Shown: positions 22,535-57,396 of the stretch, one piece after another
Numbering within the stretch: the stretch's first letter is position 1
Layout: every line of letters starts with the position of its first letter
Origin: Salpingoeca rosetta
Lineage: Eukaryota > Protista > Choanoflagellata
Reading direction: 5' to 3'
DNA: 64,000 nt
Assembly: GCA_033442325.1 (NCBI GenBank)
Contig: JAWQFM010000035.1
Span: 455,799 to 519,798 of the forward strand
Made by a program: the position numbers and the translations under genes
The notes under the pieces: generated by a model
What the model was told of the DNA's origin: nothing
Database searches by the model: none
What the model saw: the letters and a program-made list of their open reading frames with translations, nothing else

Positions 22535-22647
22535 GCTGCTCACACAGGCACAAAAACACAACAACCAGCGGCGGCCAAAGATGAGGACACAGACACACTC
22601 CAATGCAACACACAGCACAATACTCACCTTCCCCATTCCCCTCCGCA

Positions 22648-22763
<116 letters not shown>

Positions 22764-22807
22764 ACAAACACACACAAACACACACACACACGCACACGCA
22801 TGCAGTG

Positions 22808-24094
22808 TCAGCAGCCGGGGTCAATGATAAGGACAGCGTCGGCATTGTGCGGTACGCCATAGATGAGACCATTTGGAGCCAGCACACCCGCGAACCACTT
22901 CATTGAACCCTCCGGTACAGCCAGCGTCGACGTGTCTGCCGTCCCGGTGGCAGGATCAATGAGGAGCACGGCTGTCACTGATGCAGGAATGCCCACGACG
23001 AGGCCGTTGCTTGTAAGCACACCGCCGTGCCAAGAGATGCCTCCAGCCAAGTTGGAAAATGTCGTCGCTTCAGCGGTGTTGGTGCTCGGATCAATGACAA
23101 GCGCAGCATGGATGACAAACGGGATGCAGTAGATCAGGCCGTTGTTTGCCAGCACAGCACCACCCCACTTTCGGGAGCCAGAAAGCGGGCTCGGGATGCT
23201 CGTCGTGTCTGCCGTGTTGGTCACAGGGTCGATGATGAGCACGCTGGATGCAGAGGTGGGGGCCGCGTAGATCAGGCCGTTGGGCGCTTGCACGCCACCT
23301 TGCCACTTCTCACGGTTGGCGGTTAGCCCCTGAATCGAGGTTGTGTCCGTTGTGTTGGCCGCCGGGTCGATGATGAGCACGGCTGGTGCAGACCAGGGGA
23401 CGCCATAGATGAGGCCATTGTCGGCCAGTACACAGCTGAAATATTTGCCACCACTCGAGGACAGGCCAGAGATGGTGGTTGTGTCGGCGGTGTTCGTTGT
23501 GGGGTCGATGACAAGTACGGATGTTGCTGTGAACGGTACACCGTAGATGAGGCCGTTGTCGCCAAGCACGCCGGCACCCCACTTTGAGGTGTCAGTTGGA
23601 AAGCCGCCCATTGTCGTGTCATCCACTCCGTTGGTGCTTGGGTCAAGGATGACGATGGAGGAAGCACTGAACGGAATGAAATAGATGAGGCCGTTTGTGG
23701 CCAAGACACCATCCGACCACTTGAATGTTGACGTGGTGCCGAGCCCCGTGATGGTTGTGGTGTCCACGGTCGGTGGTGTGATGTCGCACAGCTGGCGGTC
23801 CAAGGAGCTCAGCTGCCGTGCTTGGTTCGTGTTCACGCGATCCAGGTCTCGCAACATGCTCTGCTGCTCTTGTATCAGCTCAAACGTCTCCGCCACGTTC
23901 ACCCCATTCACAAACACAGCCGCCGGCTGCTGCTGCTTGTGCTGCTCCTGTGGATGGGTGGTGTTGATGTGGAACGCACCGTGCTCATCTTCTTCCAGCA
24001 CCACCTCCGCACCAACAAAGAAGACGAGGAAGATGTGGACGCCAAGCAAGAGGCAAAGCTGTGCCAGCAACAACAGTGGCGCCCTCAGCCTCAT
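22808..24094 (-). CDS. Secreted 7-bladed beta-propeller protein, paralogue 1 (signal peptide, short beta-rich cap, coiled coil, 7 repeats); intronless
   Basis: 428-aa ORF with a hydrophobic leader, EVVLEEDEHGAFHINT, VFVNGVNV and a heptad stretch, then 7 x KWxGGVLAxNGLIYGxP..A..VLIIDP.T.T.DTT; ends DPGC. Confidence 0.85.
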   Translation of the reverse strand: MRLRAPLLLLAQLCLLLGVHIFLVFFVGAEVVLEEDEHGAFHINTTHPQEQHKQQQPAAVFVNGVNVAETFELIQEQQSMLRDLDRVNTNQARQLSSLDRQLCDITPPTVDTTTITGLGTTSTFKWSDGVLATNGLIYFIPFSASSIVILDPSTNGVDDTTMGGFPTDTSKWGAGVLGDNGLIYGVPFTATSVLVIDPTTNTADTTTISGLSSSGGKYFSCVLADNGLIYGVPWSAPAVLIIDPAANTTDTTSIQGLTANREKWQGGVQAPNGLIYAAPTSASSVLIIDPVTNTADTTSIPSPLSGSRKWGGAVLANNGLIYCIPFVIHAALVIDPSTNTAEATTFSNLAGGISWHGGVLTSNGLVVGIPASVTAVLLIDPATGTADTSTLAVPEGSMKWFAGVLAPNGLIYGVPHNADAVLIIDPGC

Positions 24095-24391
24095 CGTATT
24101 GATCAGCCGCTCCGATCGACCGTCTTGGGTTGATTTGCTTCAGTGCTTCGCGACGCTACGACCCATAAACAGGTCCAAAACACGCGCACGCAAACAACTG
24201 ACTTCAGTCGACATGGAAATGCGTCATTCCGTGCATTTACACAGCCATCACACGCGCCCCTTGTTACACTTGTTACAAGTGTTTGTAGGGCCATTTTTTT
24301 GTTTTTCAAGACAGCAAGACAGTGAGACAGCGCAACCCAAGCCCAGCAGCGACCCACAACCACCAAACGAACAAGCACCAAGAAGCAAACC

Positions 24392-25963
24392 ATGCCACCA
24401 CACCGGGTGTTCATCTCGCTGCGCTTCAGCGAGGCCATGGAGGAGAGCGAAGCCCTGAAGAAGGCGTTGGACAAGCGGGGCGTGCCCACGTTCCTGTGCG
24501 CCGTTTCCTCTGGCGACAGCATCGCCGACGCCGTGATCGAGGCCATCGACGAGTGCGAGCTGGTGGTGATCATGGGCACGCACACGTACGGCGAGAAGAC
24601 GGACAGCAAGTTCAGCTCGCGCGAGGAGCTCGAGTTCATCATCAACGACGAGAAGCCGTTCTTCCTGGTGAAGATGTGCGACCGCTTCAAGCACGCCAAG
24701 ACGCGCTTCTGGCTTCCGCCCACCATCGCCTACCACCCATGGCAGCCGCAGGGTGCCGAGCGCTCCGCTCCGCCAGACGAGCTTGTGGACGCCATCATCG
24801 CCAAGCTCAAGGACGTGACCGGCGTCGGTTCACCAGTGAAGCTGCAGCAACCACAATCAACTAGCTCAGCGTCCTCTTCCCAAGTTCATGGGGTGCGTGC
24901 AGTCAGTGGCGGTAGTGCTGAGGACGCCGTGCGCAAGCTGCAGACCAACGGCCGTAGCATGCACGCGGCTGAGATTGTGCAGTTGATGCAGGCGTTTCCC
25001 GCCTCTGCTGACGTGCAACGTTTTGCCTGCAAGGTACTGGAAGGCCAGGCAATGGACGGTGAGCCAAAGCGTGTGGAGGCGGTTGCATCCGGCGCCATCG
25101 ACGCAATCATCAAGGCGATGAAGATGCACAGCAGCAACGGCTCTGTGCAAAAGAATGGGTGTGGTGCGCTGCAGAACCTGGCAGTGAACGACGACAACGC
25201 GGTAGCGATTGCGTCAAAGGGCGGGATTGATGTTGTGGTTGCGGCGATGAAGATGCACAACAGCAACGGCTCTGTGCAAAAGAATGGGTGTGGTGCGCTG
25301 CAGAACCTGGCAGTGAACGATGACAACGACGTTGCGATCGCGTCAAAGGGTGGGATTGATGCTGTGATTGCGGCGATGAAGTTGCACAACAGCAACGGTG
25401 GTGTGCAAGAGCAAGGGTGTGGTGCGTTGTGGAGCCTGGCAATGAACGACGACAACAGGGTGGTGATTGGATTGAAGGGTGGGATTGATGCTGTGATCGC
25501 GGCGATGAAGACGCACAGCAGCAACGGTGGTGTGCAAGAGAATGGGTGTGCTGCGCTGCGAAACCTGGCAATGAACGACGACAACAAGGCTGCGATTGGA
25601 TTGAATGGTGGGATTGATGCTGTGATTGCGGCGATGAACAGCCACACCAGCAACGTCGGTGTGCAAGAGCAAGGGTGTGCTGCGCTGGGGAACCTGGCAT
25701 ACAACAATGATGACAACAAGGCTGCGGTTGGATTGAATGGTGGGATTGATGCTGTGATTGCGGCGATGAAGAACTACACCAACAAAGGCGATGTGCAAGA
25801 GAGTGGGTGTAATGCACTTGTAGTCATCGCATCTCACCCTGGCTTGAGCGATCACCTTCGTTCCGAAAACGTGTCTCTCCTCGCCAGACAGGCCAAGGAG
25901 AACCACCCAAGCAACCGTGGTGTGCAGCAACAGGCAGACCGCTTGCTCAGCAAGCTTGCCTGA
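24392..25963 (+). CDS. TIR-domain + armadillo-repeat protein; intronless
   Basis: N-terminal TIR pattern (RVFISLR..L...GV.TFL..GD.I...I..C.LVVI.GT.TY...S.EELEF..KPFFLV) with Glu at the catalytic-type position. C-terminal 43-aa ARM repeats (VQxxGCxALxNLAxNDDNxxxIxxxGGIDAVIAAM). Confidence 0.88.
   Translation: MPPHRVFISLRFSEAMEESEALKKALDKRGVPTFLCAVSSGDSIADAVIEAIDECELVVIMGTHTYGEKTDSKFSSREELEFIINDEKPFFLVKMCDRFKHAKTRFWLPPTIAYHPWQPQGAERSAPPDELVDAIIAKLKDVTGVGSPVKLQQPQSTSSASSSQVHGVRAVSGGSAEDAVRKLQTNGRSMHAAEIVQLMQAFPASADVQRFACKVLEGQAMDGEPKRVEAVASGAIDAIIKAMKMHSSNGSVQKNGCGALQNLAVNDDNAVAIASKGGIDVVVAAMKMHNSNGSVQKNGCGALQNLAVNDDNDVAIASKGGIDAVIAAMKLHNSNGGVQEQGCGALWSLAMNDDNRVVIGLKGGIDAVIAAMKTHSSNGGVQENGCAALRNLAMNDDNKAAIGLNGGIDAVIAAMNSHTSNVGVQEQGCAALGNLAYNNDDNKAAVGLNGGIDAVIAAMKNYTNKGDVQESGCNALVVIASHPGLSDHLRSENVSLLARQAKENHPSNRGVQQQADRLLSKLA
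25118..25830 (+). repeat. Coding tandem repeat, 129-bp unit, ~5.5 copies (ARM repeats)
   Basis: Repeat starts (GCG ATG AA) at 25118, 25247, 25376, 25505, 25634 and 25766; DNA-level similarity is obvious by eye. Confidence 0.9.
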
Positions 25964-26787
25964 CCCTCTTCCGAACCCCTGCTCCCTTCTGATGTTTTCT
26001 GCGTTTCCTGTTGCTTGCCCTGCCTCCACATCTCGCCTTGTGTTTGTGTCTCCATGTCACCTCGTTTCGCCATCACCACCATCATGATCACATTCGTGTC
26101 CACAACACGTCCAGTTCCGGCTTTGCTTGATGAGGGAGCTGTCTTGCCCTTGCTTGCTTGAATTCGTTTGGTGTCTACTTTCTTGCAGACTTGTTTCGGT
26201 CGCTTGTTTGTTCGTTCGTTCATGTGCTCTTCGTTCACTGGTTCATGCACATCGGTTGCATCAACCCAGTAGTAACCATCAACAACAAACACATGCACAC
26301 ACACGAGTTCAACCGCATACCCATTTTCACTGCAACTGCTATGGGAGGAGAGAGGTTGCAGACGTTCTGTGACATCAACGAAAGCAACACACAAGGACCA
26401 AACCACGACCGAACAACCACTCTTGAGCTACCGCTACGCAATCAACAACTGTGACACTCGTTGCGCACATGTTCTCTTATTTCACTCACAGAAAGCAACG
26501 TGCACGTGCCATCCCCGCCTCCACCCTTCCTTTCTGCCTGCCACCAGCACCACCACCACCACCACGACAACGACGACGACCACCACTACCATGACAACGA
26601 CGACCACCACCACCACTACGACCACTACGACCACCACCACCACCACCACCATGACAACGACGACGACCACCACCACTACGACCACGACAACGACCACATC
26701 AACCCCACCCTTCTCCAACCCTTTGATCCATCTGCCTGCCTCCCTCACACCTCACACCACACACCACCTTCTTCTGCAGTTGTCCAA

Positions 26788-27093
26788 TCACACAATTGCA
26801 AACTTGCGTGCGCCGCCTGTGCCGCTGCTTGTGGACTGCACACGTGCACGTGGCTCACCCTGCGGGCTTGTCATCATGGTCCCCGCGTGTGCTGTGGTGG
26901 TCGCACCGCCAGCGACAAACGCGCTGACGGGCATGTTGTCGTAGAAGGAGAGGGGCCGGTTGCCCTGCTGTGACGACGTCGACACCGTGTTGCTGCGAGA
27001 CCGCACGCTCTGGCGCATGAACTTGCCGCGACTTGGCTGGCGCGCTCGCACACTCCGCTTGCTGCGCATGCTCGCATACCGGTTCACGCGTGC
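26788..27093 (-). pseudogene. Orphan terminal exon of an unrelated gene, now downstream of propeller paralogue 2
   Basis: GT donor at 27348, (GT)n intron, CAG acceptor at 27094, then a 101-codon basic/Ser-rich open frame to a stop. The upstream exon remnant (QLVVDDL) overlaps the propeller stop in another frame. Confidence 0.5.
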
Positions 27094-27280
27094 CTGCACA
27101 TGGGTGGGTAGTGGTGGTGGTGATAGTGGTTGGTGAGCGAATGACACGGACACAAGGAAGGTCATGCAAAGCCGGTGGTGTTGACAGAGAAGGTGGACCA
27201 GAACGAGCTCAACACAGTCAGGCAAAGAGACAGACAGAGACACACATACACAAATGTACACACACACACACACACGCACG

Positions 27281-27315
<35 letters not shown>

Positions 27316-27355
27316 TCACACACACACACACATGCATGCGCCACGCACCAGATCA

Positions 27356-28801
27356 TCAACAACCAATTGGGTCAATGACGAGGACTGCGTCAGCAGCGAC
27401 CGGCACGCCATAGATGAGCCCGTTGCTTGCGAGCACGCCAGCACCCCACTTGACCACGTCTGTGGAAACAGCTAGCGTGCTTGTATCCACGGTGTTGGTC
27501 GTGGGATCAATGATGAGAACGGAGCCAGCATTCAACGGAATGCCGACGATGAGGCCGTTGCTTGCAAGCACACCGCCGCTCCACTTCCGATCATCCGTGG
27601 ACAAGCCACTCAGCGTGCTGGTGTCAGCTGTGTGGTCAGCTGGGTCAATGATGAGGACAGAGGAGGCCACATGTGGTATGCCATAGATGAGCCCATTGCC
27701 AGCAAGCACAGTGCCGCGCCACTTGTATTCGCCGACAATCGGGGAGATGCTCGTCGTGTCTGCCGTGTTGGTCACAGGGTCGATGATGAGCACGCTGGAT
27801 GCAGAGGTGGGGGCCGCGTAGATCAGGCCGTTGGGCGCTTGCACGCCACCAAACCACTTGGCTGTTCCAAAGCCACTACCAATGGTCGACGTGTCCGCTG
27901 ACCCTGCGACAGGGTCGATGATCAGGACGAAGAACGAATTCCACGGTATGCCATAGATGAGGCCGTTGTCAGCCGCAACGCCACTCAGCCACTTGCCGCC
28001 ACCACTGGATAGTTGTGCAATACTTGTTGTGTCGGTTGTATTGGTCGTCGGGTTGATGATGAGGATCGACGTCTCAGTGTATGGGATGCCATAAATGAGG
28101 CCGTTGTCGCCAAGCACGCCGGCACCCCATTTCTCTCCATCGCTCGAGAAGCCAGACATTGTCGTAGTGTCAGCACTGTTGGTGCTTGGGTCAAGGATGA
28201 GCACAGCGTCGGCGTTCAACGGCGTGAAGTAAATGAGGCCGTTTGTGGCCAAGACACCATCCGACCACTTGAATGTTGACGTGGTGCCGAGCCCCGTGAT
28301 GGTTGTGGTGTCCACGGTCGGTGGTGTGATGTCGCACAGCTGGCGGTCCAAGGAGCTCAGCTGCCGTGCTTGGTTCGTGTTCACGCGATCCAGGTCTCGC
28401 AACATGCTCTGCTGCTCTTGTATCAGCTCAAACATCTCCGCCACGTTCACCCCATTCACAAACACAGCCGCCGGCTGCTGCTGCTTGTGCTGCTCCTGTG
28501 GATGGGTGGTGTTGATGTGGAACGCACCGTGCTCATCTTCTTCCAGCACCACCTCCGCACCAACAAAGAAGACGAGGAAGACGTGGACGCCAAGCAAGAG
28601 GGAGAGCGGTGCCAGCAACAACAGTGGCGCCCTCAACCTCGTCTTCTCCCTCGTTCTCCTCGTTTCCAGCAACCCGGCACGTCTGTTCCGTGTACTTCGC
28701 GACGTTGCTGCAACTGCAGCTAGCACAGCGGCAGTCTTGGCCACCCACCCAGACCCAGCGCGTGCTCCACGATGATCATCAGCGCGCACAACGTGCATCA
28801 T
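27356..28801 (-). CDS. 7-bladed beta-propeller protein, paralogue 2; start uncertain
   Basis: Same architecture as paralogue 1. The equivalent start codon is ACG and the nearest in-frame ATGs are at 28798/28801. Ends DPIGC. Confidence 0.8.
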   Translation of the reverse strand: MMHVVRADDHRGARAGSGWVAKTAAVLAAVAATSRSTRNRRAGLLETRRTREKTRLRAPLLLLAPLSLLLGVHVFLVFFVGAEVVLEEDEHGAFHINTTHPQEQHKQQQPAAVFVNGVNVAEMFELIQEQQSMLRDLDRVNTNQARQLSSLDRQLCDITPPTVDTTTITGLGTTSTFKWSDGVLATNGLIYFTPLNADAVLILDPSTNSADTTTMSGFSSDGEKWGAGVLGDNGLIYGIPYTETSILIINPTTNTTDTTSIAQLSSGGGKWLSGVAADNGLIYGIPWNSFFVLIIDPVAGSADTSTIGSGFGTAKWFGGVQAPNGLIYAAPTSASSVLIIDPVTNTADTTSISPIVGEYKWRGTVLAGNGLIYGIPHVASSVLIIDPADHTADTSTLSGLSTDDRKWSGGVLASNGLIVGIPLNAGSVLIIDPTTNTVDTSTLAVSTDVVKWGAGVLASNGLIYGVPVAADAVLVIDPIGC

Positions 28802-29112
28802 CCCGATGACGACTGACTTCAGTCGAAGTGGTGCTGGACATTGATCAATGTGTGCATTTGTGGCAAAGACAAGTGAACAACACAAGTGAACACAAGCGAC
28901 AATGGTGAGCGCGTTCGCCAGCCAGCCAGTGTGCACTGTTGTGACATGCGAGCGTGGTGTGAAGTGACATGGGCTTCTCTGAAGGGCTTGCCTGTGCTTG
29001 GATGTTCGCTGAATGACATGATGTGACGTACACTTGAACTTGCACTTTGCTTCGTCAATGACAGAGCCATCCACCACCTTTCGGGTTTCCACCTCGTGGT
29101 GCACCACCACCC

Positions 29113-53887: not shown

Positions 53888-55126
53888 CTAGCAGCCGGGG
53901 TCGATGACAAGCAGGTCGGATGCTACGTAGGGGATGCCGTAGATGAGGCCGTTGTTGGCGAGGACACCGTCTTGCCACTTGTCCAGAGACTCTGACACGG
54001 GGAGAGATGTGATGTCGATCGTGTTGGTGGCCGTGTCGATGACCAACACAACCGGTGCGTTGCGCGGTATGGCGTAGATGCGCCCATTGTGGGCCAGCAC
54101 TCCGCCCCGCCACTTATAACTGGTGTCCGAGAGACCACTAATGGTGGTGGTGTCTATTGTGTTGGTGGCTGGGTCGATGATGAGGACGGACGAAGCGGTG
54201 TACGGGACGCCATAGATGAGACCGTTATCTGCAAGGACGGCGCCGTGCCACTTGTTTAATAACCCTGGCAAGCCTCGCATTTTCGTGGTGTCGGTGGTGT
54301 TGTTTAAGGGGTCGATGATGAGCACCGAGTCGGCCCAGCTTGGAATGCCGTAGACGAGGCCGTTGCTTGCTTGCACCCCACCGCGCCACTTGAACAGGCC
54401 TGATCCAGACAGAGGCATGGCCGTGGTGTCCGTGGCGTTGGTCGCTGGGTCGATGATGAGGACAGATGCCGCGGACCACGGAACGGCGTAGATGAGGCCG
54501 TTGTCGGCGGCGACGCCGCTGATCCACTTGTTCCCGGTTGATGGCAGCCCGCCAAGGCTGGTCGCATCCACGGCGTTTGTCGATGGGTCAATGACGAGCA
54601 CGGCCTCAGCGTCAAAGGGGAACCCGAAGATCAACCCGTTGTCTGCGAGCACGCCGCCAGCCCAATCGCCGCTTCCGCCGCTTCCGTCGAAGCCGCTGAT
54701 GGTCGTTGTGTCGGTGGTGTTTGCCGCTGGGTCAATGATCAGCACAGAGTCTGACGCGAATGGCATGCAGTAGATGCGGCCGTTGCTTGCCAGCACGCCA
54801 CCGATCCAATCACCGACCCCTGCCCCAACACCAGAGATGACACTTGTGGCTGGTGAGAGGCGCCGACAAAGCGCTTCCTGGTGCCGTTGGTCCTGTGCTC
54901 GCAGTTCCTCATTCACACGCTGTTGCTCCTCAAGCATGATCGCCTGCTGCTGCACGACGTCAAACATCTTCCCCACGTCCACCCCGTTCACAAACACGGG
55001 CTGCTCTGCCGGGTTGCTGGTGTTGATGTGCAGCGCACCGTGCTCGTCGTGCTCGATCACCACCTCCGCCACGCAGCAGGGTGCAAAGAAGAGGAGCATG
55101 GTGGTAACGGTGACGAGAACAGCCAT
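53888..55126 (-). CDS. Secreted 7-bladed beta-propeller protein, paralogue 3; intronless
   Basis: MAVLVTVTTMLLFFAPCCVA|EVVIEHDEHGALHINT, PVFVNGVDV, coiled coil, 7 repeats; ends DPGC. Confidence 0.85.
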   Translation of the reverse strand: MAVLVTVTTMLLFFAPCCVAEVVIEHDEHGALHINTSNPAEQPVFVNGVDVGKMFDVVQQQAIMLEEQQRVNEELRAQDQRHQEALCRRLSPATSVISGVGAGVGDWIGGVLASNGRIYCMPFASDSVLIIDPAANTTDTTTISGFDGSGGSGDWAGGVLADNGLIFGFPFDAEAVLVIDPSTNAVDATSLGGLPSTGNKWISGVAADNGLIYAVPWSAASVLIIDPATNATDTTAMPLSGSGLFKWRGGVQASNGLVYGIPSWADSVLIIDPLNNTTDTTKMRGLPGLLNKWHGAVLADNGLIYGVPYTASSVLIIDPATNTIDTTTISGLSDTSYKWRGGVLAHNGRIYAIPRNAPVVLVIDTATNTIDITSLPVSESLDKWQDGVLANNGLIYGIPYVASDLLVIDPGC

Positions 55127-55679
55127 GGCTGCTGCTGCTGCGCCTGTACCTGTCGGTGCTCCGGCTGTGCTGTGCTGTGCTGTGCTCTGCCGCGGGTGGA
55201 TGGAGGGTAGAAGTTGTTGTGGTTGGTGTGTTCTCTGATTCTGTTGGTTGTTTCTTGTTTGCATGTGGGTGTAAAGGACGGAAGCCTTTTGGAAATCTTC
55301 CATTGGTTTTCGCTGGAACACGCAGCGTGACGAGGCAGAGGTGACAGGATGGATGGATGGTATTGGGGGCGCTGCGCTGCAGTGGATGGATGGAGAGCAT
55401 GCGATGGAGCAAGGAGGAGGAAGGGTGCTAGGGAGAGAGTGTCATGCTCATGCATGTGTGCCTGTATGCGTGCGCGTGTGTCTGTAGCTTGTGTGTGAAG
55501 CTTGTGTCGTGTCGTCAGACATCAAACAGAAACAGAACACTTGGGGGTCTAGGGGTCTGCGTGTTACGGTGCCTGCTGTGAGCGAGTGAGCTGCCCTGTT
55601 GCTTGTGACGTCACAGCAGAGTTCGAGTTACAGTGCCTTCAAGTGTCGTAGCTGAGCTCTGCACGTCAAGCAATACGAC

Positions 55680-56042: not shown

Positions 56043-57299
56043 TCAGCAGCCGGGGTCAATCACGAGGCCTTCCATTGCAGTACGAGGTACGCCGTAAACG
56101 AGGCCGTTGGGTGCAATCACCCCATCCCACCACTTGTCGGATGCTGCAGATACTGGCAGCGTCGTCGTGTCCGCTGTGAGTGTTGAGGGGTCGATGATGA
56201 GCACAGAGGCTGCATCCCTCGGGATGCCAATGACCCGGCCGTTGGGGGCAAGGATGCCACCGACCCATTTGCCGTTGTTGCTGGAGAGGGTAGCAATGGA
56301 GGTCGTGTCTGTGGTGTTGCTGCGGGGGTCGACAACGAGCACAGAGGGGCTGGTGAATGGGATGCCGAAGACGAGGCCGTTGTCTGCAAGCACAGTCCCG
56401 AGCCACTTTGCGGGTCCTGCCAGGCCACCAAAGGTTGTGGCGTCTGTTGTGTTTGTGGCTGGATCGATGATCAGGACGGACTTGGCATTGTGTGGCGTGC
56501 AGTAAATCAGGCCGCTGTCCACCTGGGCGCCGCCGTACCACCTGAACTGCAACGCGGGGAGCCCATCGACGGGTATGTGGCTGGTGGTGTTGGTCGCTGG
56601 GTCAATGATGAGGACAGATGACGCAGACCATGGAACGCCATAGATGAGGCCGTTATTGGCAGCAACGCCGCTGATCCACTTGCTACCGCCTGTTTGCAGC
56701 CCACCAAGTGAAGTGCTGTCGGCTGTTTTCGTTGTGGGGTTGATCACGAGCACCGCGTCGGCGTCGTGCGGGAAGCCGTAGATCAAGCCGGTGTCTGCCA
56801 AGGCGCCACCTCCCCACTTGGCACCCACGCCCAGGTTGTTCATGGAAGTGGTGTCAACGGTGTTGGTCGCTGGATCAATGGTCAGCACGGAGCCGGAGTT
56901 GTGAGGGATGCCAACCACGATGCCTGCGTCAGAAACGACGCCGCCGAGCCAGTCATAATCTCCAGTTCCAATACCGGGGATGACGGTTGTGGCTGGTGGA
57001 AACCGGCGACACAGTGCTTCGATGCTCCGAGCATCCTGTGCTCGCAGTTCCTCATTCACACGCTGCAGCGTCTCCAACGTGCTGCCATGTGCGGCAACCA
57101 ACGCGTCCATCGTGCCCACGTTCACCCCGTTCACAAGCACAGGCTGCACTGAGGGGTTGCTGGTGTTGATGTGCAGCGCACCGTGCTCGTCTTGCTCCAG
57201 CACCACCTCCGCCAGGCAGCACGGCGCAAAGAAGAGGAGCGTGGTGGTGACGGTGACGAGAACAGCCGCACACAACCCCTGGCAGCGCAGCGAGGACAT
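56043..57299 (-). CDS. Secreted 7-bladed beta-propeller protein, paralogue 4; intronless
   Basis: MSSLRCQG..LLFFAPCCLA|EVVLEQDEHGALHINT, PVLVNGVNV, coiled coil, 7 repeats; ends DPGC. Confidence 0.85.
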   Translation of the reverse strand: MSSLRCQGLCAAVLVTVTTTLLFFAPCCLAEVVLEQDEHGALHINTSNPSVQPVLVNGVNVGTMDALVAAHGSTLETLQRVNEELRAQDARSIEALCRRFPPATTVIPGIGTGDYDWLGGVVSDAGIVVGIPHNSGSVLTIDPATNTVDTTSMNNLGVGAKWGGGALADTGLIYGFPHDADAVLVINPTTKTADSTSLGGLQTGGSKWISGVAANNGLIYGVPWSASSVLIIDPATNTTSHIPVDGLPALQFRWYGGAQVDSGLIYCTPHNAKSVLIIDPATNTTDATTFGGLAGPAKWLGTVLADNGLVFGIPFTSPSVLVVDPRSNTTDTTSIATLSSNNGKWVGGILAPNGRVIGIPRDAASVLIIDPSTLTADTTTLPVSAASDKWWDGVIAPNGLVYGVPRTAMEGLVIDPGC

Positions 57300-57396
57300 G
57301 GTGGCTGCTGCTGCTGCAAGTTGGGAAATGTTGTTGGAATCATTCACAAAGTTTCAGCGACAACAACAAAGCAGACGCACCAGCACAACAGGTAGC

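What the first reader, a model, noticed from the sequence alone, without database searches (positions are those of the whole stretch)
22808..28825. Candidate innate-immunity island: TIR-ARM effector flanked by secreted variable beta-propeller genes
Seen: three intronless genes sit between intron-rich DOHH and Prp40. The TIR-ARM gene is head-to-head with propeller 1 across only ~300 bp, and propeller 2 lies just downstream. Both gene types are repeat proteins with conserved scaffolds and variable surface positions. Known: TIR domains with a catalytic Glu are NAD+-cleaving immune effectors (SARM1, plant NLR TIRs, bacterial Thoeris), and such genes often cluster in rapidly rearranging loci. Inference: a co-regulated module pairing secreted recognition proteins with an intracellular TIR sensor/executioner in a unicellular relative of animals.
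Basis: partly seen in the sequence, partly recalled or inferred. Interest (0 to 1): 0.8.

Follow-up and report, generated by a model that had tools for sequence, protein, structure and literature searches.

The report
TIR-armadillo gene flanked by secreted propellers
In the choanoflagellate Salpingoeca rosetta, a gene for an enzyme-type TIR signalling domain joined to armadillo repeats sits back-to-back with a gene for a secreted seven-bladed propeller protein; the pairing has been copied as a block to three places in the genome, which hints at a shared sensing role that nobody has tested.

Summary
The window is S. rosetta scaffold GL832988.1. It carries three intron-free genes:
- prop1, 22808-24094 on the minus strand
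- TIR-ARM, 24392-25963 on the plus strand
- prop2, 27356-28801 on the minus strand

They lie between an intron-rich HEAT-repeat gene (DOHH-like) and Prp40. RNA-seq shows prop1 and TIR-ARM well expressed from transcript starts about 110 bp apart, and prop2 only weakly.

The N-terminal domain folds as a TIR (pLDDT 93; best structural matches are plant TIRs, AbTir and SARM1). Its Glu79 aligns with the catalytic Glu86 of Roq1 and is invariant across the family alignment. The ARM part resembles Vac8 and beta-catenin, not SARM1. The propellers are secreted seven-bladed YVTN-like proteins with a coiled coil.

New evidence on linkage:
- All three TIR-ARM paralogues have a propeller neighbour. This reflects block duplication, so it counts as one ancestral pairing.
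- An annotated gene elsewhere (PTSG_02868) joins the same TIR subfamily, a membrane helix and the same propeller family. That join rests on an unverified intron.

Against the "island" reading: four other propeller loci, and paralogues 3 and 4, have no TIR of this subfamily nearby. No dN/dS value exceeds 1. prop1 and TIR-ARM levels ran in opposite order across three runs.

An immune role is inferred only. The scan's notes flag the sister locus and the fusion gene on other DNA.

The parts
22808..24094 (-). prop1: an intron-free gene for a 428-aa secreted protein. Order of parts: signal peptide, small beta cap, coiled coil (aa 67-105), then a 7-bladed propeller (aa 109-428) ending in DPGC.
   Evidence: ORF. 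Called as a 428-aa single exon in the public annotation. AF2 model with pLDDT 90. Foldseek matches to a YVTN propeller, Vgb lyase and HTCS sensor propellers. RNA depth 30-85x on the expected strand. Signal-peptide pattern shared across paralogues.
24095..24391 (.). 297-bp divergent promoter shared by prop1 and TIR-ARM. The two transcript starts are about 110 bp apart.
   Evidence: Read ends at 24202/24205 (prop1) and 24314/24316 (TIR-ARM) in three stranded RNA runs. The region is 91% identical in the sister locus L001.
24198..24210 (-). 13-nt motif CGACTGAAGTCAG lying on the prop1 transcript start.
   Evidence: Two exact copies in the window and two more at one mismatch, against 0.14 matches expected at up to one mismatch. 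It also lies upstream of PTSG_10777 in L001 but not in the other propeller loci.
24392..25963 (+). TIR-ARM gene, 523 aa, intron-free and expressed.
   Evidence: ORF. The identical protein is called in the public annotation. RNA depth 40-190x; coverage falls away between about 26220 and 26300.
24392..24826 (+). TIR domain (aa 1-145) of a large, mostly protist subfamily that Pfam calls DUF4062.
   Evidence: Pfam DUF4062 above its cut-off, TIR_2 below. 688 related protein clusters. AF2 pLDDT 93, and nearly all of the best Foldseek matches are TIR domains. A profile of the family matches Roq1, RUN1 and SARM1 TIRs.
24626..24628 (+). Codon of Glu79, the candidate catalytic glutamate (in SSREELEFI).
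   Evidence: Translation. Glu in 124 of 126 family members, and invariant in alignment A1. In the profile alignment it falls on Roq1 Glu86, by my count of the printed alignment.
24947..25960 (+). Armadillo-repeat domain. It includes about five tandem 129-nt (43-aa) units at 25114-25818 that are 76-86% identical to each other in DNA.
   Evidence: Pfam Arm, ARM_ARMC5 and ARM_LRRK2. PDB sequence matches to Vac8, beta-catenin and LRRK2, with no SARM1 match. Internal repeats. Higher dN than the TIR between paralogues.
27356..28801 (-). prop2: tandem copy of prop1. Open for 481 codons from an upstream ATG, and weakly expressed.
   Evidence: ORF. 75% protein identity to prop1. RNA depth 0-12x over most of its length. 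Overall dN/dS against prop1 is 0.33.
28640..28642 (-). ACG at the position of prop1's start codon, so prop2 has lost the ancestral ATG.
   Evidence: Sequence comparison.
28813..28825 (-). Second exact copy of CGACTGAAGTCAG, upstream of prop2. It suggests that prop2 keeps the prop1-type start element.
   Evidence: RNA depth of 6x at 28700-28899 in run X23 fits a start near here.
22664..24095 (-). Duplication unit A (prop1 plus 144 bp of 3' flank). It is paired with 27212-28643.
   Evidence: blastn, 78% identity over 1460 bp. dS is 0 over aa 31-108 but saturated in blades 2, 3 and 7, which points to a gene-conversion mosaic.
27212..28643 (-). Duplication unit B (prop2 plus 3' flank).
23591..27268 (.). 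3.7-kb segment (5' end of prop1, promoter, TIR-ARM and its 3' flank) that has been copied in inverted orientation about 60 kb away on the same scaffold.
   Evidence: blastn to L001 9186-12887, 83-91% identity. That copy carries PTSG_10777, a truncated propeller 98% identical to prop1 aa 1-168, head-to-head with PTSG_10776, a TIR-ARM 71% identical to the window's.
53888..55321 (-). Propeller paralogue 3 (about 50% identical to prop1). No TIR neighbour.
   Evidence: tblastn. Pfam DUF5074 and DUF6923 above their cut-offs. A TIR-family profile finds nothing else in the window.
56043..57347 (-). Propeller paralogue 4 (about 48% identical to prop1). No TIR neighbour.
   Evidence: It groups with paralogue 3, apart from prop1 and prop2.

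Best explanation
This is a lineage-specific gene cluster of Salpingoeca rosetta, shaped by duplication, that pairs two kinds of gene.

1. A cytosolic TIR-ARM protein. Its N-terminal TIR keeps the catalytic glutamate of the NAD+-cleaving TIR enzymes. Its C-terminal Vac8/beta-catenin-type armadillo repeats evolve faster than the TIR. They are the likely partner- or ligand-binding part that controls the TIR.

2. Secreted proteins made of a coiled coil and a seven-bladed propeller. Their variable residues lie in the D-A and B-C loops, which by convention form the top, ligand-binding face of a propeller. They probably bind extracellular ligands, perhaps glycans.

Shown here:
- The genes are real. 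prop1 and TIR-ARM are transcribed from a compact divergent promoter.
- The TIR fold and the conserved Glu.
- The propeller fold and the signal peptides.
- The TIR-ARM/propeller pairing was inherited through at least two block duplications.

Inferred:
- The pairing is kept because the two products act in one extracellular-sensing and TIR-signalling route.
- The annotated gene PTSG_02868, which joins the same TIR subfamily through a membrane helix to the same propeller family, would be the membrane receptor of that route.
- TIR-ARM would act as a cytosolic TIR adaptor or NAD+-derived-signal effector.
- The secreted propellers would act as soluble recognition or co-receptor proteins.

Whether the cue is a pathogen, a prey bacterium or a developmental signal is unknown.
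For: Genes and expression.

TIR:
- AF2 pLDDT 93, and nearly all of the best Foldseek matches are TIR domains (RUN1, RPV1, RPP1, AbTir, SARM1).
- A profile of the family matches the Roq1 TIR at E = 2e-4, with the family's E-E-L motif on Roq1 E85-E86-L87.
- Glu79 is present in 124 of 126 members and is invariant in alignment A1.
- The TIR is under purifying selection, omega 0.11-0.44.

ARM: dN is 0.21-0.32 against 0.02-0.07 for the TIR. In other protists related ARM domains are joined to caspase, ART, trypsin-like, kinase and other domains.

Propeller: AF2 pLDDT 90 with 7 blades. Foldseek matches to YVTN, Vgb lyase and HTCS sensor propellers. The signal peptide is followed by a conserved EVVLEEDEHGAFHINTS start, and the protein ends in DPGC. 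Variability is concentrated in the D-A and B-C loops.

Linkage:
- All three TIR-ARM paralogues have a propeller within one or two genes.
- The propeller beside the third paralogue is the sister of prop1 and prop2 (support 88/96).
- PTSG_02868 has a TIR 50% identical to this one, a membrane helix, and a propeller 51% identical to prop1. Two more propeller genes lie within 8 kb of it.

Literature: a different S. rosetta TIR makes cADPR in a Glu-dependent way (bioRxiv 10.64898/2026.04.20.719644). TIR+Arm proteins are noted in several choanoflagellates (PMC6040629).
Against: - The three paired loci are copies of one ancestral pairing, so they give one independent data point.
- The propeller family has at least 22 members on many scaffolds. 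Four more sampled loci (L007-L010), and paralogues 3 and 4, have no TIR of this subfamily within the sequence held.
- The PTSG_02868 fusion depends on a predicted 173-nt GT..AG intron that I could not verify. Its second exon has its own Met followed by a membrane helix, so these could be two adjacent genes.
- No other TIR+propeller fusion was found in the protein database.
- The prop1 to TIR-ARM depth ratio was 0.69, 1.51 and 0.28 in three runs, with the two genes in opposite rank order.
- dN/dS does not exceed 1 in any segment tested.
- TIR-ARM has no evident oligomerisation domain, which known TIR enzymes need.
- No PADLOC defence-family match.
- There is no functional or challenge data.
Confidence: 0.45

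Rival explanations
1. Hitch-hiking. One chance adjacency between a member of a large, scattered propeller family and a TIR-ARM gene was carried along by later segmental duplications. The two gene kinds have unrelated functions, and the shared promoter is only a result of tight gene spacing.
For: - Two block duplications account for all three paired loci.
- The sister locus keeps only a truncated 179-aa propeller (PTSG_10777), so an intact propeller is not needed next to TIR-ARM there.
- Propellers at L007, L009, L010 and window paralogues 3 and 4 have other neighbours.
- Expression levels are not correlated over three runs.
- Head-to-head gene pairs about 300 bp apart are seen at other loci here too.
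Against: - PTSG_02868 is a second link, apparently independent: it has a distant TIR paralogue (50% identity) and its propeller lies outside the prop1/prop2 clade.
- With about 22 propeller genes among roughly 11,600 genes (gene count from my own knowledge), a given gene has under 1% chance of a propeller within two genes.
- A full propeller (PTSG_10778) also lies beside the truncated one at the sister locus.
Confidence: 0.35
2. TIR-ARM is a non-enzymatic scaffold or adaptor, like animal MyD88 or TRIF-type TIRs. The secreted propellers are matrix, adhesion or prey-capture proteins, or enzymes, rather than recognition receptors. The cluster would then serve ordinary cell biology and not NAD+-based signalling.
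For: - ARM repeats of the Vac8/beta-catenin type are classic protein scaffolds.
- The closest fully superposed structural match of the propeller is an enzyme, virginiamycin B lyase, TM-score 0.85 normalised to the target.
- This TIR subfamily is joined to many ordinary signalling domains in S. rosetta: PDZ, SH2, Roc-COR and LRR.
- Both genes are expressed in cultures with no known challenge.
Against: - Invariance of Glu79, together with F7, S9, E14 and C96, across clusters only 40-55% identical is the pattern of an active site, not of a pure adaptor.
- Identity to Vgb lyase is only 9-11%, and I did not check whether its catalytic residues are shared.
- A Glu-dependent cADPR-producing TIR does exist in this species, though it is a different protein.
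Confidence: 0.15

Closest known systems
Choanoflagellate intracellular TIR+Arm proteins, noted by Richter et al. 2018 (eLife, PMC6040629)
   Same: Same architecture class and the same organism group. The paper lists Arm, Ank and SH2 among the domains found with intracellular TIRs in several choanoflagellates. A TIR-ARM protein also exists in Microstomoeca roanoka.
   Different: The paper gives one sentence. It says nothing about genomic context, paralogue structure, the catalytic residue of this subfamily, or any propeller link. None of the six neighbouring or paralogous PTSG gene identifiers I searched appears in the searchable literature.
SARM1 / TIR-1 (ARM-SAM-SAM-TIR NAD+ hydrolase)
   Same: It combines an ARM-repeat domain with an enzyme-type TIR that has the conserved Glu. 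The SARM1 TIR is among the structural and profile matches. It may work in a similar way, with a repeat domain gating a TIR enzyme.
   Different: The domain order is reversed (TIR first). There are no SAM domains. The ARM is of the Vac8/beta-catenin/LRRK2 type with no match to the SARM1 ARM. Choanoflagellates have separate true SARM1 homologues. It is not a SARM1 family member.
Plant TIR domains of NLRs and TIR-only proteins (RUN1, RPV1, Roq1, RPP1, L6)
   Same: These are the best structural matches (TM-score 0.6-0.7) and the best profile matches. The alignment covers the beta-A FxSxR motif and the catalytic Glu.
   Different: Only 13-23% identity. There is no NB-ARC or LRR. The plant-specific features are not evident, and products and activity are untested.
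Toll-like receptors (LRR ectodomain, membrane helix, cytosolic TIR)
   Same: The related annotated gene PTSG_02868 has a repeat ectodomain, one membrane helix and a cytosolic TIR. The window's secreted propellers and TIR-ARM would be the split counterparts of that layout.
   Different: The topology is inverted (TIR at the N-terminus, type II). The ectodomain is a propeller rather than LRRs, and the TIR is enzyme-type. No window gene is itself a receptor. The fusion's intron is unverified.
YVTN / DUF5074 / DUF6923 seven-bladed propellers (archaeal S-layer YVTN domain, Vgb lyase, Bacteroides hybrid two-component sensor domains)
   Same: Seven four-stranded blades with a similar repeat length. 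Foldseek E-values reach 1e-13, and the TM-score to Vgb is 0.85. Pfam DUF5074 and DUF6923 hit some paralogues above their cut-offs. There are many bacterial and metagenomic relatives.
   Different: The N-terminal signal peptide, beta cap and coiled coil, and the C-terminal DPGC, were seen here only in eukaryotic relatives: S. rosetta and transcript-derived EukProt entries. prop1 and prop2 themselves score just below the DUF5074 cut-off.

Membership tests
TIR domain, enzyme-type (NAD+-cleaving) class | Flavodoxin-like TIR fold | tested here: met
   AF2 model with pLDDT 93. Nearly all of the best Foldseek PDB matches are TIR domains, E down to 3e-6, TM-score 0.6-0.7.
TIR domain, enzyme-type (NAD+-cleaving) class | Conserved catalytic glutamate in helix alpha-C | tested here: met
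   Glu79 falls on Roq1 Glu86 in the profile alignment. It is present in 124 of 126 members and invariant in alignment A1. It lies in predicted helix 76-85.
TIR domain, enzyme-type (NAD+-cleaving) class | Passes the Pfam TIR or TIR_2 gathering score | tested here: not met
   TIR_2 scores 19.6-22.4 bits against a cut-off of 28, and TIR scores 15.5 against 21.3. The related model DUF4062 passes, at 27.6-30.4 against 24.7.
TIR domain, enzyme-type (NAD+-cleaving) class | NAD+ hydrolase or cyclase activity that depends on the Glu | not testable with these tools
   This needs recombinant protein and LC-MS. The S. rosetta TIR shown to make cADPR in the 2026 preprint is a different protein, F2UPN6.
SARM1 family | Domain order ARM-SAM-SAM-TIR | tested here: not met
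   The TIR is at aa 1-145 and the ARM at aa 186-523. No SAM domain appears in Pfam.
SARM1 family | ARM domain homologous to the SARM1 ARM | tested here: not met
   A PDB sequence search with the ARM part finds Vac8, beta-catenin, LRRK2 and ARMC4, and no SARM1 chain at E up to 1e-3.
Toll-like receptor | LRR ectodomain, membrane helix and C-terminal cytosolic TIR in one chain | tested here: not met
   No window gene has this layout. The related PTSG_02868 has the reverse order and a propeller.
YVTN / DUF5074 / DUF6923 beta-propellers | Seven-bladed propeller fold | tested here: met
   AF2 gives seven four-stranded blades with pLDDT above 90. Foldseek matches.
YVTN / DUF5074 / DUF6923 beta-propellers | Passes the Pfam gathering score | tested here: inconclusive
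   prop1 scores 25.5 and prop2 26.3 against the DUF5074 cut-off of 27.2. Paralogue 3 passes both DUF5074 (39.9) and DUF6923 (33.9). Paralogue 4 passes DUF6923 (29.9).
Immune-receptor gene cluster (as in plant NLR or animal receptor clusters) | Tandem or segmental duplication with gene conversion | tested here: met
   Duplicates in the window and at L001 and L003. dS between prop1 and prop2 is a mosaic.
Immune-receptor gene cluster (as in plant NLR or animal receptor clusters) | Positive (diversifying) selection on recognition surfaces | tested here: not met
   Segment-level dN/dS is 0.07-0.91 for the propellers and 0.40-0.64 for the ARM. A site-level test was not possible with so few close copies.
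Immune-receptor gene cluster (as in plant NLR or animal receptor clusters) | Induction by, or requirement in, microbial or viral challenge | not tested
   Only three RNA runs under unknown conditions were laid.

The most novel reading that the evidence does not exclude
S. rosetta runs a propeller-based sensing system that mirrors the Toll-like receptor system. Secreted coiled-coil propellers and a type II TIR-membrane-propeller receptor (PTSG_02868) would detect extracellular microbial ligands. The paired cytosolic TIR-ARM proteins, encoded next to the propellers, would be recruited through TIR-TIR contacts and turn NAD+ into a signal or deplete it. That would be an undescribed pre-animal innate-immune or bacterial-sensing pathway.
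Probability: 0.15. Interest if true: 0.8.

Novelty: new variant of a known kind. Interest (0 to 1): 0.5.

Why it matters
[quoted passage not shown] Their TIR genes are used to reconstruct how animal innate immunity began, and S. rosetta can be studied genetically. This locus offers a concrete, testable pair: an enzyme-type TIR controlled by a fast-evolving repeat domain, encoded next to secreted recognition-like propellers. The same two modules are apparently fused into a receptor elsewhere in the genome. If the link is functional, TIR signalling was coupled to non-LRR ectodomains before animals arose. If it is not, the locus is a clear example of how block duplication can imitate a functional gene cluster.

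Tried and rejected
- SARM1 membership: rejected on domain order, on the absence of SAM domains and on ARM type.
- PADLOC defence models: no match for TIR-ARM, prop1 or PTSG_02868.
- Other TIR+propeller fusions: none among the top 150 TIR relatives, and none in a word-based search with PTSG_02868. This is limited by the length window and by word sharing.
- TIRs of this subfamily near other propellers: a family profile run over six-frame translations of L001-L010 and the whole window found only the TIRs already known.
- Pfam on the neighbours of the L004, L007, L009 and L010 propellers gave an LRR-kinase, an ARM hit or nothing. No TIR was found.
- Diversifying selection: no segment has dN/dS above 1.
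- Literature search by gene identifier: nothing.
- I could not verify the PTSG_02868 intron with reads.

Full report
**Where the window is.** The 523-aa TIR-ARM protein is identical to a gene called on Salpingoeca rosetta GCA_000188695.1, scaffold GL832988.1, at 474604-476175 of the record. The window is therefore about 450.2-514.2 kb of that scaffold.

**The observation.** The three ORFs exist as described:
- prop1, 22808-24094 (-), 428 aa.
- TIR-ARM, 24392-25963 (+), 523 aa.
- prop2, which ends at 27356 (-).

The public annotation calls prop1 and TIR-ARM as single exons. On one side lies a 300-aa HEAT-repeat gene spread over 3.6 kb. This is consistent with DOHH, but I did not verify it further. 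On the other side lies a WW/FF-domain Prp40 gene.

I laid three stranded RNA-seq runs and one set of contigs on 23100-29099.
- prop1 is covered at about 30-85x and TIR-ARM at about 40-190x, each on the expected strand. No splice joints fall inside either gene.
- Read ends place the prop1 transcript start at about 24202-24205 and the TIR-ARM start at about 24314-24316. The two genes therefore share a true divergent promoter with starts about 110 bp apart.
- prop2 is covered at only 0-12x over most of its length.
- A GT..AG intron at 28903-29064 belongs to Prp40.

**prop2 in detail.** At the position of prop1's ATG, prop2 has ACG (28642-28640). The first in-frame ATG is at 28801, which gives 481 aa with a 53-residue extension ahead of the hydrophobic segment. 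The 13-nt motif CGACTGAAGTCAG lies on the prop1 transcript start and recurs exactly at 28813-28825 upstream of prop2. It also lies upstream of PTSG_10777 in the sister locus, but not in the other propeller loci. About 0.14 matches (at up to one mismatch) are expected by chance in the window. The public prop2 model (469 aa, window 26788-28536) starts at an ATG that is out of frame with the propeller ORF, so it is probably wrong. Overall dN/dS against prop1 is 0.33, so prop2 has been under constraint. Whether it is still functional is open.

**The TIR.** Pfam places aa 5-82 in DUF4062 above its cut-off. TIR_2 and TIR stay below theirs.

An exhaustive phmmer search with aa 1-153 found 688 representative clusters at E up to 1e-3, and 394 at E up to 1e-10. 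An alignment of 111 of these (A1) has F7, S9, E14, E79 and C96 invariant. In a wider alignment, Glu79 is present in 124 of 126 members.

A profile of A1 matches the TIR of Roq1 (E = 2e-4), then RUN1, RPV1 and SARM1. By my count of the printed alignment, the family's E-E-L motif falls on Roq1 E85-E86-L87. Glu86 is, from my own knowledge, the catalytic residue of Roq1.

The AlphaFold2 model has pLDDT 93 and puts Glu79 in helix 76-85. Nearly all of its best Foldseek matches in the PDB are TIR domains: plant RUN1, RPV1, RPP1, SNC1 and L6, bacterial AbTir, and SARM1 and TLRs.

The domain is therefore a TIR with the hallmark of the enzyme class. Its activity is untested. A 2026 preprint shows Glu-dependent cADPR synthesis by an S. 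rosetta TIR, but that is a different protein, F2UPN6.

**The ARM part.** Residues 186-523 are classic armadillo repeats. They match Pfam Arm, ARM_ARMC5 and ARM_LRRK2. In the PDB they match Vac8, beta-catenin and LRRK2, with no SARM1 chain. About five 43-aa units are 76-86% identical to each other in DNA.

Among the three S. rosetta paralogues the TIR is strongly constrained (dN 0.02-0.07, omega 0.11-0.44). The ARM diverges faster (dN 0.21-0.32, omega 0.40-0.64). Repeat mis-registration may inflate the ARM figures.

In other protists related ARM domains are joined to caspase, ART, trypsin-like, kinase, BTB and other domains. In S. rosetta the same TIR subfamily is joined to PDZ, LRR-Roc-COR, a SecA-like helicase, SH2 plus an LHFPL tetraspan, and a membrane helix plus propeller. 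A TIR-ARM also exists in Microstomoeca roanoka.

Richter et al. 2018 already mention Arm among the domains found with intracellular TIRs in choanoflagellates. The protein is not a SARM1 homologue. The order is reversed, there is no SAM domain, the ARM is unrelated, and true SARM1 homologues exist separately.

**The propellers.** The prop1 model (pLDDT 90) has four parts:
- an N-terminal hydrophobic helix, aa 7-26;
- a small beta element, aa 31-66;
- a long helix, aa 67-105;
- seven four-stranded blades, aa 109-428.

Its best structural matches are a YVTN propeller of an archaeal S-layer protein, virginiamycin B lyase (TM-score 0.85 normalised to the target), and the periplasmic sensor propellers of Bacteroides hybrid two-component systems.

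Across 20 S. rosetta paralogues the hydrophobic N-terminus is followed, after small residues, by a conserved EVVLEEDEHGAFHINTS-like start. Most of these proteins end in DPGC. This is the pattern of a cleaved signal peptide and a secreted, N-glycosylated protein.

Within each blade the scaffold residues are conserved. Variability is concentrated in the D-A loop and the B-C loop. By textbook propeller geometry both loops lie on the top face.

**Duplication history.**
- prop1 and prop2 form a tandem duplicate, 22664-24095 against 27212-28643, 78% identical in DNA. Their dS is a mosaic: zero over aa 31-108, about 0.2-0.3 in blades 1 and 4, and saturated in blades 2, 3 and 7. This indicates gene-conversion tracts.
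- A 3.7-kb segment, 23591-27268, holds the 5' end of prop1, the promoter, TIR-ARM and its 3' flank. It is copied in inverted orientation about 60 kb away at 83-91% identity. That copy gives PTSG_10777, a truncated propeller 98% identical to prop1 aa 1-168, head-to-head with PTSG_10776, a TIR-ARM 71% identical. A full propeller, PTSG_10778, lies next door.
- On scaffold GL832984.1 a third TIR-ARM, PTSG_09915, is followed by two convergent propellers. The nearer one is the sister of prop1 and prop2 in a maximum-likelihood tree, with support 88/96. Similarity to the window is confined to coding sequence, so this is an older block duplication.
- Loose read ends match the 5' UTR of PTSG_09915 and the ARM region of PTSG_10776, so both paralogues are transcribed.

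**Is the TIR-propeller link more than chance?**

Evidence for a link:
- All three TIR-ARM genes have a propeller neighbour.
- PTSG_02868 on GL832960.1 is annotated as a TIR (50% identical to this one), a membrane helix, a Ser/Thr/Pro/Gly-rich stalk and a seven-bladed propeller (51% identical to prop1) ending in DPGC. Two further propeller genes lie within 8 kb.
- With at least 22 propeller genes among roughly 11,600 genes (gene count from my own knowledge), a given gene has under 1% chance of a propeller within two genes.

Evidence against:
- The three TIR-ARM loci are one event copied.
- The fusion depends on a predicted 173-nt GT..AG intron (L004 10478-10650). Its second exon contains its own Met followed by the membrane helix, so two adjacent genes remain possible.
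- No other TIR+propeller fusion was found.
- Four other propeller loci have no TIR of this subfamily within the sequence held. One has a DUF4062-TPR gene 7 kb away, one has a TIR-less ARM neighbour, and one is head-to-head with an LRR receptor kinase.
- Paralogues 3 and 4 in the window have no TIR neighbour.
- The prop1 to TIR-ARM depth ratio was 0.69, 1.51 and 0.28 in the three runs, with the two genes in opposite rank order. This is weak evidence (n = 3, conditions unknown, and paralogue reads cross-map) against tight co-regulation.

**Verdict.** The parts look like a recognition module and a TIR effector, and there are two apparently independent links between them. An immune role, co-regulation and diversifying selection are not shown. 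I rate the functional-module reading at about 0.45, pure hitch-hiking at about 0.35, and a non-enzymatic or non-recognition reading at about 0.15.

The scan's own notes (unchecked AI notes) flag the sister locus, the PTSG_02868 gene and another TIR-membrane-propeller gene on other DNA of this genome. I found the first two independently and tested them as described above. I did not test the third.

Noticed in passing
window 26788-28536 (public gene model of prop2): The annotated 469-aa model starts at an ATG (28536) that is out of frame with the propeller ORF and runs past its stop codon. It looks like a mis-annotation, caused by prop2 having ACG where the ancestral ATG was.
   Followed up: partly
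L001 8987-9695 (PTSG_10777, about 60 kb from the window on the same scaffold): A truncated propeller gene. Its first 168 residues are 98% identical to prop1. The ORF then leaves the propeller at the duplication breakpoint (window 23591). It is probably a pseudogene or a new short ORF.
   Followed up: partly
L005 (ENA metagenome contig k141_395673, 11.3 kb): A contig with 33% GC and densely packed intron-free genes on both strands. It carries a propeller 48% identical to prop1, but without the signal peptide or coiled coil, and an HMG-box gene. It looks like a giant virus or an AT-rich protist. A second propeller hit (P0189) is listed on a contig of the same length.
   Followed up: partly
L010 5202-9852 (-) and 10001-11303 (+): Propeller PTSG_09123 lies head-to-head, about 150 bp away, with a 1344-aa LRR receptor kinase. 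No TIR was detected in the pieces scanned.
   Followed up: partly
L008 18620-21350 (-): A 1101-aa DUF4062 (TIR-like) plus TPR gene lies about 7 kb from propeller PTSG_10920. Its N-terminus is beyond the sequence held, so it could not be compared with the window's TIR.
   Followed up: no
window 24324, reads with loose ends: Six to nine reads per run match the TIR-ARM 5' region from 24324 onward but carry a different upstream sequence. That sequence is not found in the window or in any locus fetched. It suggests a further expressed paralogue, or an alternative 5' exon, that I did not locate.
   Followed up: partly
window 22560-22800 and 27220-27343: Long (CA)n/(TG)n microsatellites lie directly 3' of prop1 and prop2. 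The 3' boundary of the prop1/prop2 duplication, and the right end of the 3.7-kb segment copied to L001, both fall within or next to them.
   Followed up: no
P0060 (PTSG_05359) and P0235 (PTSG_06434): The same TIR subfamily is fused to an SH2 domain plus an LHFPL-type four-helix membrane domain, and to a PDZ domain. This suggests a promiscuous signalling module that has expanded to at least ten genes in S. rosetta.
   Followed up: partly
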